Shown here: positions 21,294 to 43,608 of the stretch, piece by piece
Layout of the letters: the number at the start of each line of letters is the position of its first letter
Position numbering within the stretch: position 1 is the stretch's first letter
Assembly: GCF_006345805.1 (NCBI RefSeq)
Contig: NC_043012.1
Span: forward strand, 26,846,001 to 26,910,000
Origin: Octopus sinensis
Lineage: Eukaryota
Length of the DNA stretch: 64,000 nucleotides
Reading direction: 5' to 3'
Notes under the pieces: model-generated
Told to the model about the DNA's origin: nothing
Database searches by the model: none
The model's input: the letters and a program-made list of their open reading frames with translations, nothing else
Position numbers and translations under genes: made by a program

Positions 21294-21334
<41 letters not shown>

Positions 21335-21387
21335 TATTATTACTATTATTATTATTATTGTTATTATTGTTATTATTGTTGTTGTTG

Positions 21388-21422
<35 letters not shown>

Positions 21423-21820
21423 GTTGTTGTTGTTGCTGTTATTATTATTATTATCATTATTATGTTTATTATTCTTATTTTTATTATTGTTATTATTATT
21501 GTGTTTATGAATATCATGTTTATTATTATTGTTGTTGTTGTTGTTGTTATGAACAGGACGGTGGATGGCAGATGAGTAGGATCGGTAGAGCACCGAAAAA
21601 AAAGAAATACTTCACTGTAGTTCTGCTTCATTGCTCTGTGAGTTCATATTCCGCCGCGGTCGACATAATACGTACCAGTTGAGCACTAGAGTCGATGTAA
21701 TCGAATACTTCTCTCTCACCGGAGTTCAGGCCCTATGCCTATAGTAGACTTTACTACTACTACTACTACTACTATTAAGTAGACGTGCTAGAAGCGTGTA
21801 TGTATATATATTTTCTCACG

Positions 21821-21933: not shown

Positions 21934-21967
<34 letters not shown>

Positions 21968-22042
21968 TTGTAAATGTATATATATATGTATATATATATA
22001 TATGTGTATATATATATATGTATATATATATGTGTATATATA

Positions 22043-22107
<65 letters not shown>

Positions 22108-22160
22108 AGAAAAATGAATTATCTTATTACGGATAATTCGAAAGATAACCGATACCTAGG

Positions 22161-22212
<52 letters not shown>

Positions 22213-23876: not shown

Positions 23877-24021
23877 ATATGCTCATTAGGTTTTTTTCGT
23901 ATTATCTGAAATAGAATACCCGCAAATATATTAATCCCCAAAACTAAATTATATATATATACATAGTTTTTTTCGTATTATCTGAAATAGAATACCCGCA
24001 TATCTATTAATCCCCAAAACT

Positions 24022-24071
<50 letters not shown>

Positions 24072-24157
24072 TATATATGTGTGTAATTTAGTTTTGGGGA
24101 TTAATAGATATGCGGTATTCTATTTCAGATAATACGAAAAAAACCTAATGAGCATAT
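23877..24157. repeat. Direct + inverted ~70-bp repeats around (TA)n
   Basis: 23877-23951 and 23967-24028 are direct copies; 24084-24157 is their reverse complement. Confidence 0.85.
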
Positions 24158-24222
24158 ATATATTATATATATATATATATACACAATGTATGAATACATA
24201 TGTTTATATACATACATACATG

Positions 24223-24293
<71 letters not shown>

Positions 24294-24359
24294 TGTATGA
24301 ATATATATGTTTATATACATACATACATGGGTATATATTATATATATATATAATATATA

Positions 24360-24663
24360 TATCACGTGATCACGTGACCGACCAGTCCATCAGATGTAGT
24401 TACACATCGCTGGTCACAATGCGTTCGCATTGTTTTAGCCTTCGAATGACGCCACCCCGCTGGCTAAGCGAGCAGGCCAACAGAAGAAAGAGTGGGAGAA
24501 AGAGTGGTGAAAGAGTACAGCAGGGATCACCACCACTCCTGCCGGAGCCTCGTGGAGCTTTTAGGTGTTTTCGCTCAATAAACACTCACAACGCCCGGTC
24601 TGGGAATCGAAACCGCGATCCTACGACCGCGAGTCCGCTGCCCTAACCACTGGGCCATTACGC

Positions 24664-24668
<5 letters not shown>
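24360..24668 (-). mobile_element. SINE family D (tRNA head GGCGTAATGGCCCAGTGGTTAGGG...GTTTCGATTCCC)
   Basis: Clear A and B boxes. Its 5' half is shared with 30257-30550. Ends in TCACGTGATCACGTGAT next to (TA)n. Confidence 0.8.
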
Positions 24669-24716
<48 letters not shown>

Positions 24717-24728
24717 CATACATATATG

Positions 24729-24759
<31 letters not shown>

Positions 24760-24859
24760 GTATATATATGTATAGATATACATATATATACATATATGTA
24801 TAATGTATATATATATATATTGTATATATATATATATGTATATATAATATATATATATC

Positions 24860-24928
<69 letters not shown>

Positions 24929-25157
24929 CATAATTAATCAATATAGGGTGGCAAGGAAAATTTTGTAGAATTTTATTGCCACCAGCGGCCCAGTGGGAAA
25001 AAATTAAATAGTCATAGACCATTTTTAAGTTCAACATTAACAATTAAGGAACGGCCATAATAGGCCATTCACCCACTAGAAATAACAGCCAAAGCTTCTA
25101 CCGCAAATAAAGATTAATTCCGTAAACAGGAGAAAATTAAAAAACATTTACCCTGTA

Positions 25158-25263
25158 ATTTCTTGTACGGTATACCGTTTCATCCGCTTTTAATGGTAAA
25201 CTAACCTGATTAAATTAAATCAAGCCAATCTTCCATAAGACCTCGGATTCTTCAGCAAGAAAT
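25158..25263 (-). ncRNA. Type I hammerhead ribozyme, array copy 1 (intact core)
   Basis: Stem I 25158-25165/25256-25263; CTGAAGA 25255-25249; predicted cleavage between 25166 and 25165. Confidence 0.85.
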
Positions 25264-25643
25264 AGCTCAAGTCGGAACAGATATTTACACGAGGCATACC
25301 CAATCTTGCCAAGGCAATATCTGACCTAAAATTTTCAAATCGTCGCACTCGCGCCAAATTTATCGGCAGCAAATAAATATCAGCCGTCGATTCCATTACG
25401 GAATTAACCAAAAAATTCATAATTAATCAATATGGGTGGCAAGGAAAATTTTGTAGAATTTTATTGCCACCAGCGGCCCAGTGGAAAAAATTAAATAGTC
25501 ATAGACCATTTTTAGTTCAACATTAACAATTAAGGAACGGCCATAATAGGCATTCACCCACTAGAAATAACAGCCAAAGCTTCTACCGCAAATAAAGATT
25601 AATTCCGTAAACAGGAGAAAATTAAAAAAACATTTACCCTGTA

Positions 25644-25747
25644 ATTTCTTGTACGGTATACCGTTTCATCCCTGTTTAATGGTAAACTAACCTGATTAAA
25701 TTAAATCAGCCAATCTTCCATAAGCCCTCGGATCTTCAGCAAGAAAT
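25644..25747 (-). ncRNA. Type I hammerhead ribozyme, array copy 2 (1-nt deletions at stem II)
   Basis: Same motif; single-base deletions near 25670 and 25733 may be sequencing errors. Confidence 0.65.
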
Positions 25748-26239
25748 AGCTCAAGTCGGAACAGATATTTACACGAGGCATACCCAATCTTGCCAAGGCA
25801 ATATCTGACCTAAAATTTTCAAATCGTCGCACTCGCGCCAAATTTATCGGCAGCAATAAATATCAGCCGTTTTTTTTAATTTTCCTCCGTTTTACGGAAT
25901 TAATCTTTATTTGCGGTAGAAGCTTTGGCTGTTATTTCTAGTGGGTGAATGGCCTATTATGGCCGTTCCTTAATTGTTAATGTTGAACTTAAAAATGGTC
26001 TATGACTATTAATTTTTTCCCACTGGGCCGCTGGTGGCAATAAAATTCTACAAAATTTTCCTTGCCACCCTATATTGATTAATTATGAATTTTTTGGTTA
26101 ATTCCGTAATGGAATCGACGGCTGATATTTATTTGCTGCCGATAATTTGGCGCGAGTGCGACGATTTGAAAATTTTAGGTCAGATATTGCCTTGGCAAGA
26201 TTGGGTATGCCTCGTGTAAATATCTGTTCCACTTGAGCT

Positions 26240-26346
26240 ATTTCTTGCTTAAGAATCCGAGGGCTTATGGAAGATTGGCTTGATTTAATTTAATCAGGTT
26301 AGTTTACCATTAAACAGCGGATGAAACGGTATACCGTACAAGAAAT
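26240..26346 (+). ncRNA. Type I hammerhead ribozyme, array copy 3 (core variant CTTAAGA, probably inactive)
   Basis: G5>T in the CUGANGA box at 26250; the rest is intact; GUA site ends at 26338. Confidence 0.65.
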
Positions 26347-26726
26347 TACAGGTAAATGTTTTTTTAATTTTCTCCTGTTTACGAATTAATCTTTATTTGC
26401 GGTAGAAGCTTTGGCTGTTATTTCTAGTGGTGATTGGCCTATTATGGCCGTTCCTTAATTGTTAATGTTGAACTTAAAAATGGTCTATGACTATTTAATT
26501 TTTTCCCACTGGGCCGCTGGTGGCAATAAAATTCTACAAAATTTTCCTTGCCACCCTAATTGATTAATTATGAATTTTTTGGTTAATTCCGTAATGGAAT
26601 CGACGGCTGATATTTATTTGCTGCCGATAAATTTGGCGCGAGTGCGACGATTTGAAAATTTTAGGTCAGATATTGCCTTGGCAAGATTGGGTATGCCTCG
26701 TGTAAATATCTGTTCCGACTTGAGCT

Positions 26727-26833
26727 ATTTCTTGCTGAAGAATCCGAGGTCTTATGGAAGATTGGCTTGATTTAATTTAATCAGGTTAGTTTACCATTAA
26801 ACAGCGGATGAAACGGTATACCGTACAAGAAAT
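26727..26833 (+). ncRNA. Type I hammerhead ribozyme, array copy 4 (intact)
   Basis: ATTTCTTG 26727-34, CTGAAGA 26735-41, ATCCG 26742-46 / CGGAT 26805-09, GAAA 26810-13, CGG-TATA-CCG, GUA cleavage after 26825, CAAGAAAT 26826-33. Confidence 0.88.
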
Positions 26834-27212
26834 TACAGGGTAAATGTTTTTTTAATTTTCTCCTGTTTACGGAATTAATCTTTATTGCGGTAGAAGCTTT
26901 GGCTGTTATTTCTAGTGGGTGAATGGCCTATTATGGCCGTTCCTAATTGTTAATGTTGAACTTAAAAATGGTCTATGACTATTTAATTTTTTCCCACTGG
27001 CCGCTGGTGGCAATAAAATTCTACAAAATTTTCCTTGCCACCCTATATTGATTAATTATGAATTTTTTGGTTAATTCCGTAATGGAATCGACGGCTGATA
27101 TTTATTTGCTGCCGATAAATTTGGCGCGAGTGCGACGATTTGAAAATTTTAGGTCAGATATTGCCTTGGCAAGATTGGGTAGCCTCGTGTAATATCTGTT
27201 CCGACTTGAGCT

Positions 27213-27319
27213 ATTTCTTGCTGAAGAATCCGAGGGCTTATGGAAGATTGGCTTGATTTAATTTAATCAGGTTAGTTTACCATTAAACAGCGGATGAAAC
27301 GGTATACCGTACAAGAAAT
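27213..27319 (+). ncRNA. Type I hammerhead ribozyme, array copy 5 (intact)
   Basis: CTGAAGA 27221-27, CGGAT 27291-95, GAAA 27296-99, cleavage after 27311. Confidence 0.88.
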
Positions 27320-27433
27320 TACAGGGTAAATGTTTTTTTAATTTTCTCCTGTTTACGGAATTAATCTTTATTGCGTAGAGCTTTGGCTGTTATTTCTAGT
27401 GGTGAATGGCCTATTATGGCCGTTCCTTAATTG

Positions 27434-27472
<39 letters not shown>

Positions 27473-30256: not shown

Positions 30257-30550
30257 TGGAGGCTCAATGACCCAGTGGTTAGGGCAGCGGTCGGAGGATC
30301 GCGGTTTCGATTCCCAGACGGGCGTTGTGTGTGTTTATTGAGCGAAAACACCTAAAGCTCCACGAGTCTCCGGAAGAGGGTGGTGGCGACCCCTGTTGTA
30401 CTCTTGTGCTCCAACCTTCTCTCACTCTCCCTTCCTGTTTCTTGAGTAACGCTGCATGGACTGGCGTCTCGTCCAGCTGGGGGGAAAACATACGCCACAG
30501 AAACCGGGAAACCGGGACCATGAGGCTAGCTAGACTTGAAAAGGGCGCAT
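30257..30550 (+). mobile_element. SINE family D, different 3' half
   Basis: Head matches the reverse complement of 24530-24668. Confidence 0.75.
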
Positions 30551-42690: not shown

Positions 42691-42767
<77 letters not shown>

Positions 42768-42780
42768 TGATGATGATGAA

Positions 42781-43608
42781 ATACCAATGCATTGCATCGA
42801 ATGTTGAACGATTGTCTAGAAAAAGTATGGCGAATTGGAGGACGGACCTGACAGCATCTGGAAGTAGTTTAGGGACAGAAGAAATTAGGAGGGGCATCTT
42901 CCAAGAGGATTGTCTGTCTCCACTGATCTTTGTACTGTGCTTGATACCACTAACACTGATTCTGAGGAAAGCAAAAGCTGGGTATGTATTCAAAAGTCCC
43001 CAACAAAAAGTCGACCATTTGTTATTCATGGATGGCCTCAAAATTTATGGTAAAGATGAAGCCCAAGTCAATCCCCTCGTTGATACGGTGTATAGCTTCA
43101 GTGCTGATATCAGAATGGAGTTCGGACTGGGAAAGTGTGGTGTGTTAGTCTTGAAGAGAGCCAAAATCAAATATATGAACGGAGAAACGATACCTTTAGG
43201 GGAGGTTATGAAGCAGATAGAATAGACGAGCTATAAGTACTTGGGGATTTTGGAAAGAGATAAATTGATGGAGAAAGAAATGACAGAAAAATTTAAGGTG
43301 GAGTACTTGCGCAGACTGAAACTGATCCTTAAGTCAATATTAAATAGATGGAATAAGATCGAAACTATCAACACCTGGGCGGTTTCACTACTTAGATATA
43401 GAGCAGGAGTAATCGCATGGACAGTAGACGAACTAAACAGCTTAGACAAAATGATAAGGAAGTTACTAACTAGATATGGGTCACTCCACGCAAAAAGTGA
43501 CTCAGATAGACTATACGTACCAAGAAAAATCGGGGGAAGAGGACTTATTGGATGCGAACACAGCATTAGAGCAGAATAAAACAACATAGCATAGTATGTA
43601 AAAAATGC
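42781..43608 (+). pseudogene. R4/Dong-type LINE reverse transcriptase fragment
   Basis: RRGIFQEDCLSPLIFVL...HLLFMDGLKIYGK...MEFGLGKC...YKYLGI...DRLYVPRKIGGRGL; catalytic DD mutated to DG; one in-frame stop; preceded by (AAT)n. Confidence 0.9.

What the first reader, a model, noticed from the sequence alone, without database searches (positions are those of the whole stretch)
24927..27438. Hammerhead-ribozyme tandem array (~487-nt unit): candidate cephalopod retrozyme / circular RNA replicon
Seen: five copies of a type I hammerhead fold, one per repeat unit. Predicted GUA cleavage sites are spaced 487 and 486 nt on the plus arm (26338, 26825, 27311) and 486 nt on the minus arm (25166, 25652). 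All three helices pair in the intact copies (8-bp stem I, 5-bp stem II, 4-bp stem III with a palindromic TATA loop). Known: tandem non-coding repeats with one type I hammerhead per unit define non-LTR retrozymes, whose transcripts self-cleave to monomers that circularise; the metazoan examples I know are mostly shorter, roughly 150-400 nt. Inference: this is a large, young retrozyme family (copies differ mainly by 1-nt indels) in a cephalopod. I cannot check whether it has already been described.
Basis: partly seen in the sequence, partly recalled or inferred. Interest (0 to 1): 0.92.

Follow-up and report, generated by a model that had tools for sequence, protein, structure and literature searches.

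The report
Hammerhead-ribozyme tandem repeat (retrozyme) in octopus DNA
A 2.5-kb block of near-identical ~491-base repeats, each carrying a self-cutting hammerhead RNA motif, is a new example from an octopus-like genome of a known class of mobile DNA (non-LTR retrozymes).

Summary
Window 24927-27438 is a tandem array with period 486-487 and a 491-nt consensus. It has two head-to-head arms: minus strand 24927-25870 and plus strand 25871-27438.

Three of the five copies have a complete catalytic core and all three helices. One has G5 changed to U. One carries two 1-nt deletions.

The motif is not chance: my descriptor found nothing in 19.2 Mb of random sequence or in the rest of the window. It does fail Rfam's threshold (21.4 bits against 34), because helix II carries a ~58-nt insertion and its first pair is A-U instead of G-C.

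The best reading is a non-LTR retrozyme. The array sits in a (TA)n microsatellite, and the sense 3' ends of both arms abut that microsatellite. This is the tandem/inverted footprint described for Penelope-like-element integration.

Published unit lengths run 51-972 bp. The indels between copies are all deletions, which looks like long-read error. Only one strand carries a ribozyme.

The host is octopod-like. No relatives were found in any searchable collection, and expression was not testable. This is a new member of a known kind.

The parts
24666..24926 (.). Left flank: (AC)18 followed by an impure (AT)n microsatellite of ~226 bp, which directly abuts the sense 3' end of the minus arm. Presumed target site.
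   Evidence: TRF; sequence
24927..25870 (-). Minus arm: 1.9 units. In sense orientation it starts at consensus position 269 (window 25870) and ends at consensus position 241 (window 24926/7).
   Evidence: BLAST of the consensus against the window; alignment; inverted repeats
25158..25263 (-). Intact type I hammerhead. H17 (A of GUA) is at 25166, and cleavage falls between 25166 and 25165.
   Evidence: Descriptor hit
25644..25747 (-). Defective hammerhead copy (H17 at 25652). It has 1-nt deletions in the GAAGAAU run and in the helix II 3' strand. These may be sequencing errors.
   Evidence: Alignment; missed by the descriptor
25871..27438 (+). Plus arm: 3.2 units. It starts at consensus position ~22 (window 25871) and ends at consensus position 131 (window 27438). 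The first ~25 nt next to the junction carry a cluster of changes.
   Evidence: TRF
26240..26346 (+). Hammerhead copy with a core mutation, CTTAAGA (G5->T at 26250). The homologous cleavage site is after 26338. Predicted inactive.
   Evidence: Sequence; alignment
26727..26833 (+). Intact type I hammerhead. Helix I 26727-26734/26826-33, core CTGAAGA 26735-41, helix II arm 26742-26809, GAAA at 26810, helix III ACGG-TATA-CCGT. Cleavage is after 26825.
   Evidence: Rfam alignment; MFE reproduces the three-way junction
27213..27319 (+). Intact type I hammerhead. Cleavage is after 27311.
27439..27470 (.). Right flank: pure (AT)17 microsatellite that directly abuts the sense 3' end of the plus arm.
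   Evidence: TRF

Best explanation
This is one genomic insertion of a non-autonomous, non-LTR retrozyme in an octopod-like cephalopod genome.

Shown: a ~491-nt non-coding, AT-rich unit is repeated head-to-tail, with one type I hammerhead spanning each unit boundary.

Inferred life cycle, by analogy with coral, mussel and axolotl retrozymes:
- Read-through or Pol II transcription gives multimeric RNA.
- Each hammerhead cuts after GUA (...CCGUA|CAAGAAAU...), releasing ~491-nt monomers with 5'-OH and 2',3'-cyclic phosphate ends.
- A host tRNA ligase of the RtcB type closes these monomers into highly base-paired circles.
- A reverse transcriptase borrowed from an autonomous Penelope-like element (PLE) copies the circular or multimeric RNA into multimeric cDNA at a cleaved AT-rich target.

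The anatomy of this locus fits the last step. The array sits inside a (TA)n microsatellite. It consists of two opposed arms whose sense 3' ends both join the microsatellite and whose 5'-truncated ends meet head-to-head at 25870/25871. That is what extension of both cleaved target strands would produce. None of the four arm ends coincides with the ribozyme cleavage site, which is expected if reverse transcription starts internally on a multimeric or circular template.
For: Tandem array and consensus.

Hammerhead core and helices at one site per unit. Same assignment by the Rfam Hammerhead_1 alignment. The MFE of the 117-nt junction RNA is exactly the three-way junction (-36.3 kcal/mol). No descriptor hit in 19.2 Mb of random sequence.

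Non-coding unit: the longest ORF is 66-68 codons and has no homologue among 5.8 billion proteins. GC is 36.5%.

Structured monomer: -136.8 kcal/mol, z = -4.35, about 60% of bases paired.

Only one polarity carries a ribozyme.

Arm geometry and (TA)n flanks.

Literature:
- Definition of non-LTR retrozymes, mussel examples and RtcB circularisation: PMC7229834.
- Unit lengths of 51-972 bp and descent from PLE pLTRs: 10.64898/2026.07.22.740005.
- PLE insertions are partial tandems with an adjacent inverted 5'-truncated copy, and some clades (Naiads) prefer (TA)n targets: PMC8557442.
- A purified PLE protein cleaves AT-rich DNA, extends both strands and initiates reverse transcription internally on the RNA: PMC11167929.
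- Octopus genomes carry Penelope-like elements: PMC13282606 and PMC8967140.
Against: - The Rfam gathering score is not reached (21.4 vs 34 bits).
- The pair at the base of helix II is A10.1-U11.1 rather than the nearly universal G-C. From my own knowledge, this position contributes to metal binding and changing it usually lowers activity.
- Helix II carries a ~58-nt insertion, and no canonical loop-loop tertiary contact can be pointed to.
- In the 491-nt context the MFE forms helices II and III but not helix I.
- All units are near-identical, so there is no covariation evidence for any helix.
- Only one locus is known. No second copy exists in the window, and there are no relatives in the viral, metagenome or prokaryote collections.
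- No PLE ORF (RT plus GIY-YIG) was detected among the 89 non-microsatellite ORFs of >=80 aa scanned in the window.
- The two arm 3' ends lie at different unit phases (consensus 131 and 241). A single specific PLE initiation site would not predict this.
- (TA)n runs cover 3.3% of this window, so landing in one is only modestly significant.
- The head-to-head junction could be an assembly error.
Confidence: 0.78

Rival explanations
1. The array is an ordinary satellite or minisatellite amplified by unequal crossing-over, and it merely carries a hammerhead-like motif. There is no RNA-mediated mobility, and the inversion is a later rearrangement.
For: Only one locus was seen. The array is embedded in a microsatellite-rich region where replication slippage and rearrangement are common. 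There is no target-site duplication and no poly(A). There is no evidence of expression. One copy has a dead core.
Against: A complete 15-nt core with three helices, falling exactly once per unit, is far beyond chance. Historical 'satellites' with hammerheads (newt, Schistosoma, Dolichopoda) are now treated as retrozymes (PMC7229834 and PMC7761336). Both arm 3' ends abut (TA)n with the 5' ends meeting centrally, which is a retrotransposition-type footprint.
Confidence: 0.1
2. The array is a fragment of an autonomous Penelope-like element: its pseudo-LTR region, captured in partial tandem and inverted arrangement.
For: PLE pLTRs carry type I hammerheads and form tandem/inverted structures at microsatellites. 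Retrozymes and pLTRs are sequence-related in Xenopus.
Against: Three consecutive 491-nt units lie between hammerheads with no ORF, whereas PLE units are 2.5-4.4 kb with an RT-EN ORF. No RT or GIY-YIG domain lies next to the array, and no GIY-YIG was detected among the ORFs of >=80 aa scanned in the window. PLE hammerheads are minimal variants with a reduced helix III, but here helix III is 4 bp plus a tetraloop.
Confidence: 0.07
3. Part of the structure is an assembly or sequencing artefact. The inverted arm, the copy number or the defective copies come from chimeric or poorly polished long reads.
For: Outside the central junction, differences between units are ~25 single-base deletions, no insertions and ~4 substitutions. 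This is typical of long-read consensus error. There is a cluster of changes in the 25 nt next to the junction. Tandem/inverted PLE-type structures are known to trouble assemblies.
Against: The junction is not symmetric: consensus 269 on one side meets consensus 22 on the other. A missed-adapter fold-back would give a perfect palindrome. The two arms differ at real substitution sites and share a G/T polymorphism. An artefact would not create the hammerhead or the repeat itself.
Confidence: 0.15
4. The array is an integrated or contaminating copy of an autonomously replicating viroid-like or delta-like circular RNA agent.
For: It has a unit length of ~490 nt, a hammerhead and a strongly folded RNA.
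Against: A ribozyme is present on one polarity only. There is no ORF with any homologue. The sequence is multimeric DNA embedded between host microsatellites and SINE-like repeats. There is no match in the viral contig collection.
Confidence: 0.02

Closest known systems
Non-LTR retrozymes of the mussel Mytilus galloprovincialis (Cervera & de la Pena 2020, PMC7229834)
   Same: Molluscan host. Tandem non-coding repeats of a few hundred bp with one type I hammerhead per unit. Low GC and a highly self-paired monomer. The hammerheads lack the archetypal loop1-loop2 contacts.
   Different: The unit is 491 nt against 350-390 bp. No sequence similarity could be tested. Helix II here carries a ~58-nt insertion and an A-U closing pair. 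The mussel elements have proven circRNA expression and in vitro cleavage, which is untested here.
Dolichopoda cave-cricket pDo500 satellite (Rojas et al. 2000, cited in PMC7761336)
   Same: A ~500-bp tandem unit (size from the name and my own knowledge) whose transcripts are processed by a hammerhead. It shows that units of this size are not new.
   Different: Insect host and unrelated sequence. It forms very large satellite arrays rather than a 5-unit insertion.
Newt satellite 2 and axolotl retrozymes Rtz_331/Rtz_353 (PMC7229834)
   Same: Type I hammerhead with a palindromic helix III loop that allows two ribozymes to pair as a dimer. Here ACGGUAUACCGU is a perfect 12-nt palindrome, giving -20.8 kcal/mol as a duplex against -3.9 as a hairpin.
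   Different: Amphibian helix III has only 1-2 bp and needs dimerisation. Here a 4-bp helix III should allow monomeric action, as in other invertebrate hammerheads.
Penelope-like elements and their pLTR hammerheads (PMC8557442, PMC4209133, PMC11167929)
   Same: Type I hammerhead in a repeated terminal region. Insertions are partial tandems with an adjacent inverted 5'-truncated copy. Targets are AT-rich or (TA)n, both target strands are extended, and reverse transcription starts internally.
   Different: PLEs are autonomous (RT plus GIY-YIG ORF, 2.5-4.4 kb) and their hammerheads are minimal, with helix III reduced. This element has no ORF and a full three-helix hammerhead.
Plant LTR retrozymes (PMC4918200)
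   Same: Non-autonomous retroelements whose hammerhead-flanked RNA is released and circularised.
   Different: The plant elements have type III hammerheads inside LTRs, a PBS and PPT, units of ~600-1000 nt, GC above 55%, and mobilisation by Ty3/Gypsy. None of these apply here.

Membership tests
Hammerhead ribozyme, type I | Conserved core: C3 U4 G5 A6 N7 G8 A9, G12 A13 A14, A15.1-U16.1, H17 | tested here: met
   CUGAAGA ... GAAA ... U-A(H17) is complete in 3 of 5 copies. One copy has G5->U and one has a 1-nt deletion at A9/10.1.
Hammerhead ribozyme, type I | Three helices around the core, with helix I open and helices II and III closed | tested here: met
   Helix I 8 bp, helix II 5 bp plus an extended arm, helix III 4 bp plus a UAUA loop. 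The MFE of the 117-nt RNA gives this junction.
Hammerhead ribozyme, type I | G10.1-C11.1 pair at the base of helix II (near-universal; from my own knowledge) | tested here: not met
   A10.1-U11.1 in all copies (AUCCG/CGGAU).
Hammerhead ribozyme, type I | Score at or above the Rfam RF00163 gathering threshold (34 bits) | tested here: not met
   21.4 bits, E 0.065 in the 2.6-kb search. Nothing was reported at gathering in the whole window. The shortfall is explained by the long helix II insertion and the A-U pair.
Hammerhead ribozyme, type I | Helices supported by compensatory changes among relatives | tested here: inconclusive
   The units are ~99.8% identical at substitution level, and no relatives were found.
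Hammerhead ribozyme, type I | Site-specific self-cleavage | not testable with these tools
   Needs in vitro transcription.
Non-LTR retrozyme | Head-to-tail tandem repeats with one type I hammerhead per unit | tested here: met
Non-LTR retrozyme | Unit of tens to hundreds of bp (published range 51-972 bp) with low GC (<45-50%) | tested here: met
   491-nt consensus, 36.5% GC.
Non-LTR retrozyme | No coding capacity and no LTRs | tested here: met
   The longest ORF is 66-68 codons with no homologue. The array is bounded directly by microsatellites. PBS and PPT motifs were not specifically searched.
Non-LTR retrozyme | Monomer RNA predicted to be stable and highly self-paired | tested here: met
   -136.8 kcal/mol, z -4.35. 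The circular consensus gives -144.9 kcal/mol with 60% of bases paired.
Non-LTR retrozyme | A dispersed multi-copy family in the genome | not testable with these tools
   There is only one locus in the window, and no eukaryotic genome collection was available.
Non-LTR retrozyme | Expression as linear and circular unit-length RNA | not testable with these tools
   No transcriptome data could be reached. The protein-route search of the unit's ORF found nothing.
Non-LTR retrozyme | Co-occurrence with autonomous PLEs in the host genome | tested here: inconclusive
   No PLE ORF was detected among the ORFs of >=80 aa scanned in the window. Published octopus repeat annotations do list Penelope-like elements.
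Autonomous Penelope-like element | RT plus GIY-YIG ORF between the repeated termini | tested here: not met
Viroid-like / delta-like RNA replicon | Ribozymes on both polarities, or a replicase or antigen ORF, with no DNA stage | tested here: not met
   One polarity only, no ORF homologue, and the element is chromosomal DNA.

The most novel reading that the evidence does not exclude
This is the first described cephalopod retrozyme family, and it is currently active. It would produce abundant ~491-nt circular RNAs in octopus tissues from a structurally unusual hammerhead, with an A10.1-U11.1 pair, a ~58-nt helix II arm, and a perfectly palindromic helix III that could work as a monomer or a dimer. 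On this reading the locus is a clean footprint showing that retrozyme cDNA is integrated by PLE machinery: both target strands of a (TA)n site are extended, and initiation is internal on a circular or multimeric template. If transcribed through, the two opposed arms would also form a ~0.9-kb double-stranded RNA, a possible substrate for the very active cephalopod ADAR or small-RNA pathways.
Probability: 0.25. Interest if true: 0.5.

Novelty: new member of a known kind. Interest (0 to 1): 0.3.

Why it matters
Retrozymes are a recently recognised source of abundant ribozyme-made circular RNAs in animals, and how they are mobilised is still inferred rather than shown. A cephalopod family would extend the known host range within molluscs. 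No paper in the searchable library reports hammerheads or retrozymes in cephalopods, and detailed octopus repeat annotations do not mention them.

The locus has some value for mechanism. Its two opposed arms in a (TA)n site match what the in vitro properties of a purified Penelope-like element predict: AT-rich cleavage, extension of both strands, and internal initiation. This supports the proposal that retrozymes ride on PLEs. Beyond that it is an ordinary repeat element, and it does not open a new question.

Tried and rejected
- Rfam at gathering thresholds over the whole window: nothing. The hammerhead appears only in the permissive local scan.
- The snoR110 hit at the junction (E 1.7) was rejected as chance.
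- DNA pattern scans for relatives were run in metagenome contigs (two patterns), viral contigs and prokaryotic genomes. The single metagenome hit and the nine genome hits match only the pattern itself. Nine is about the number I estimated by hand for chance matches to a 21-base pattern with a 31-step gap in 596 Gb. All were rejected.
- Protein-route trick: the unit's 66-aa ORF was searched against 5.8 billion predicted proteins to find other assemblies containing the repeat. No candidate was found.
- Exact look-up of the gag-like ORF to identify the source contig: not on record.
- Search for PLE-type minimal hammerheads elsewhere in the window: none.
- Pfam scan of 89 window ORFs of >=80 aa (the microsatellite-derived ones were left out) for a PLE RT or GIY-YIG: only a LINE-type RT remnant, a zf-RVT and a gag zinc knuckle.
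- Literal sequence search of the hammerhead halves in the paper library: only unrelated primer matches.
- A symmetric fold-back (missed-adapter) artefact was considered for the inversion and rejected, because the junction joins different unit phases.
- Pol III transcription of the sense strand was considered and rejected, because T-runs of 6-7 occur three times per unit (Pol III termination at T-runs is from my own knowledge).
- My first shuffle script timed out. It was replaced by the tool's shuffles and a Markov-1 control.
Full report
OBSERVATION

Window 24927-27438 is a tandem repeat. Tandem Repeats Finder reports period 486, 3.2 copies and 97% matches at 25871-27438. Repeat finding and BLAST of a consensus show 1.9 further units in the opposite orientation at 24926/7-25870. 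No other copy or fragment of the unit exists in the 64-kb window.

The units were cut at the predicted cleavage sites and aligned, which gave a 491-nt consensus. Apart from the arm ends and a cluster of changes next to the central junction, the copies differ by about 25 single-base deletions, most of them in short homopolymers. There are no insertions and only about four substitutions. A deletions-only pattern at ~0.9% is what an incompletely polished long-read consensus looks like. The true units are probably ~99.8% identical and ~491 nt long, not 486-487.

THE HAMMERHEAD

I wrote a descriptor for a type I hammerhead: CUGANGA, helix II, GAAA, helix III closed by A15.1-U16.1, H17, and helix I formed by the flanks. 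It hits exactly three places in the window, all inside the array: cleavage after 26825 and after 27311 on the plus strand, and H17 at 25166 on the minus strand. Each hit has an 8-bp helix I (AUUUCUUG/CAAGAAAU), a 5-bp basal helix II (AUCCG/CGGAU) and a 4-bp helix III (ACGG/CCGU) with a UAUA loop.

The copy ending at 26338 has CUUAAGA, with the essential G5 changed at 26250. The copy ending at 25652 has lost one A of the GAAGAAU run and one C of the 3' strand of helix II. These deletions may be read errors.

The descriptor found nothing, even when relaxed to 3-bp helices, in 19.2 Mb of Markov-1 random sequence with the window's dinucleotide statistics. It also found nothing in the rest of the window.

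Rfam gives the same assignment of core and helices, but only 21.4 bits (E 0.065 in a 2.6-kb search) against a gathering score of 34. It reports nothing at gathering thresholds. There are two reasons for the shortfall:
- Helix II is not a short hairpin. It is a 68-nt arm (5 bp, an internal loop, then a ~19-bp imperfect hairpin).
- Its first pair is A10.1-U11.1 instead of G-C.

The MFE of a 117-nt RNA spanning a unit boundary is exactly the three-way junction (-36.3 kcal/mol). In a 491-nt context, helices II and III persist but helix I is replaced by alternative pairings. That is usual for circles that must not re-cleave, but it is also a caveat for activity.

Helix III plus its loop (ACGGUAUACCGU) is a perfect palindrome. 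As a hairpin it is worth -3.9 kcal/mol, and as a duplex between two ribozymes -20.8 kcal/mol. Dimeric action of the amphibian type is therefore possible but not required.

THE UNIT

The unit has 36.5% GC. Its longest ORF is 66-68 codons, and that ORF has no relative among 5.8 billion predicted proteins.

The sense RNA folds to -136.8 kcal/mol, against -109.9 +/- 6.2 for shuffles (z = -4.35). The antisense RNA gives z = -3.6. The circular consensus folds to -144.9 kcal/mol with 60% of bases paired.

No ribozyme of any Rfam family is detectable on the antisense strand. The sense strand has three T-runs of 6-7 per unit. From my own knowledge of Pol III termination, this argues against Pol III transcription of multimers.

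ARCHITECTURE OF THE LOCUS

In sense orientation:
- The plus arm runs from consensus position ~22 (window 25871) to position 131 (27438, ...GTTAAT|ATATAT).
- The minus arm runs from consensus position 269 (25870) to position 241 (24926/7, ...TTATGAA(T)|ATATAT).

Both sense 3' ends therefore join a (TA)n microsatellite: ~226 bp of impure (AT)n on the left and (AT)17 on the right. Both 5'-truncated ends meet head-to-head in the middle.

The junction joins different unit phases, so it is not the perfect palindrome that a missed-adapter fold-back read would give. None of the four ends lies at the ribozyme cleavage site.

The arms share a G/T polymorphism at consensus position 415, with units reading G,T,G on the plus arm and G,T on the minus arm. 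This shows that both arms derive from the same slightly heterogeneous template or array.

(TA)>=6 runs cover 3.3% of the window. Landing in one is suggestive, not compelling.

WHAT IT IS

Cervera and de la Pena (PMC7229834) defined non-LTR retrozymes as follows:
- short tandem repeats of low GC;
- no LTR, PBS, PPT or coding capacity;
- one type I hammerhead per unit;
- transcripts that self-cleave and are circularised, most likely by an RtcB-type tRNA ligase, into highly self-paired circles.

Mussels carry ~5000 hammerheads in 350-390-bp repeats, and those hammerheads also lack the archetypal loop-loop contacts. [quoted passage not shown]

Every sequence-level criterion is met here. The unit is not unusually large.

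Arkhipova and colleagues describe PLE insertions as 5'-truncated partial tandems, often with an inverted 5'-truncated copy immediately upstream, and with a bias for microsatellites such as (TA)n (PMC8557442). A purified PLE protein cleaves AT-rich DNA, extends both the top and the bottom strands, and starts reverse transcription internally on the RNA (PMC11167929).

The head-to-head arms in (TA)n, with ends unrelated to the ribozyme site, are what that biochemistry predicts for a non-autonomous passenger RNA. From my own knowledge, the geometry is the same as L1 'twin priming'. This step is an inference. The different phases of the two 3' ends (131 and 241) do not fit a single sequence-specific initiation site. 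A later inversion inside a plain satellite cannot be excluded.

HOST

The window is AT-rich (31-43% GC per 2-kb window), packed with microsatellites, and contains tRNA-like SINE pieces. The only homologue of its 313-aa gag-like ORF is an Octopus sinensis protein (61% identity, E 1e-109). An octopod or close relative is therefore likely.

Published octopus repeat annotations list Penelope-like elements but mention no hammerhead, ribozyme or retrozyme. No paper in the library links retrozymes or hammerheads with cephalopods beyond a PLE survey.

No PLE ORF was detected among the ORFs of >=80 aa scanned in the window, and there are no minimal PLE-type hammerheads.

RELATIVES

Pattern scans of the metagenome, viral and prokaryotic collections returned only chance matches. 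No eukaryotic genome or transcriptome collection could be searched by DNA. Copy number, family age, covariation and expression therefore remain open.

VERDICT

- 'Large' fails because the unit is within the published range.
- 'Young' fails because the indels look like sequencing noise, and identity within one array reflects one integration event.
- 'RNA replicon' fails because only one polarity has a ribozyme and the element is chromosomal.

This is a new member of a known kind. Its modest points of interest are the long helix II arm, the A-U pair at 10.1/11.1, the palindromic helix III, and a locus architecture that fits PLE-mediated integration.

Noticed in passing
window 24927-27438: Outside the central junction, differences between repeat units are ~25 single-base deletions, 0 insertions and ~4 substitutions. 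This suggests the assembly has a deletion-biased error rate of ~0.9% in this region, so single-base frameshifts elsewhere in the window should be distrusted.
   Followed up: yes
window 26754, 25239 and homologous positions (consensus position 415): A G/T polymorphism alternates along the units (plus arm G,T,G; minus arm G,T). This hints at a two-unit higher-order period or a dimeric template shared by both arms.
   Followed up: partly
window 23890-24116: A 76-nt unit is repeated twice (23890-24041). A ~35-nt near-perfect inverted repeat (CCCGCATATCTATTAATCCCCAAAACTAAATTA...) flanks a (TA)n run at 23995-24116. It gives sub-threshold 'miRNA' hits in Rfam (52 bits vs gathering 101). It is probably a MITE-like or hairpin repeat associated with (TA)n, not a miRNA.
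   Followed up: partly
window 24560-24660 (-) and around 30303-30320 (+): These are tRNA-like SINE pieces. An 18-nt B-box-containing motif, GGTTTCGATTCCCAGACC, occurs twice (0.03 expected by chance). ARAGORN calls no tRNA. The copy next to the array points away from it, so it cannot drive the array's transcription.
   Followed up: partly
window 1054-1995 (+): A 313-aa ORF with a CCHC zinc knuckle (gag-like). Its only homologue in the protein collection is Octopus sinensis LOC115225585 (61% identity, E 1e-109). It was used here only to place the host.
   Followed up: partly
window 42764-43579 (+): Remnant of a LINE-type reverse transcriptase (Pfam RVT_1 E 1.5e-4, below the cut-off; FMDGLKIY motif), split over two ORFs and preceded by long low-complexity runs. 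It is not a Penelope-like element.
   Followed up: partly
consensus 42-53 and 249-260 of the unit (e.g. window 26380-26390 and 26587-26598): The unit contains a 12-nt internal inverted repeat (TTACGGAATTAA / TTAATTCCGTAA) that pairs in the predicted fold. The head-to-head junction at 25870/25871 lies within ~30 nt of copies of it on both sides. This could have favoured template switching or the inversion.
   Followed up: no
whole window: Microsatellite density is extreme: 93 pure (TA)>=6 runs (3.3% of bases), (ATT)79 at 21295-21530, and (AT)n blocks of 200-250 bp at 21956-22210, 24154-24362 and 24702-24927.
   Followed up: partly
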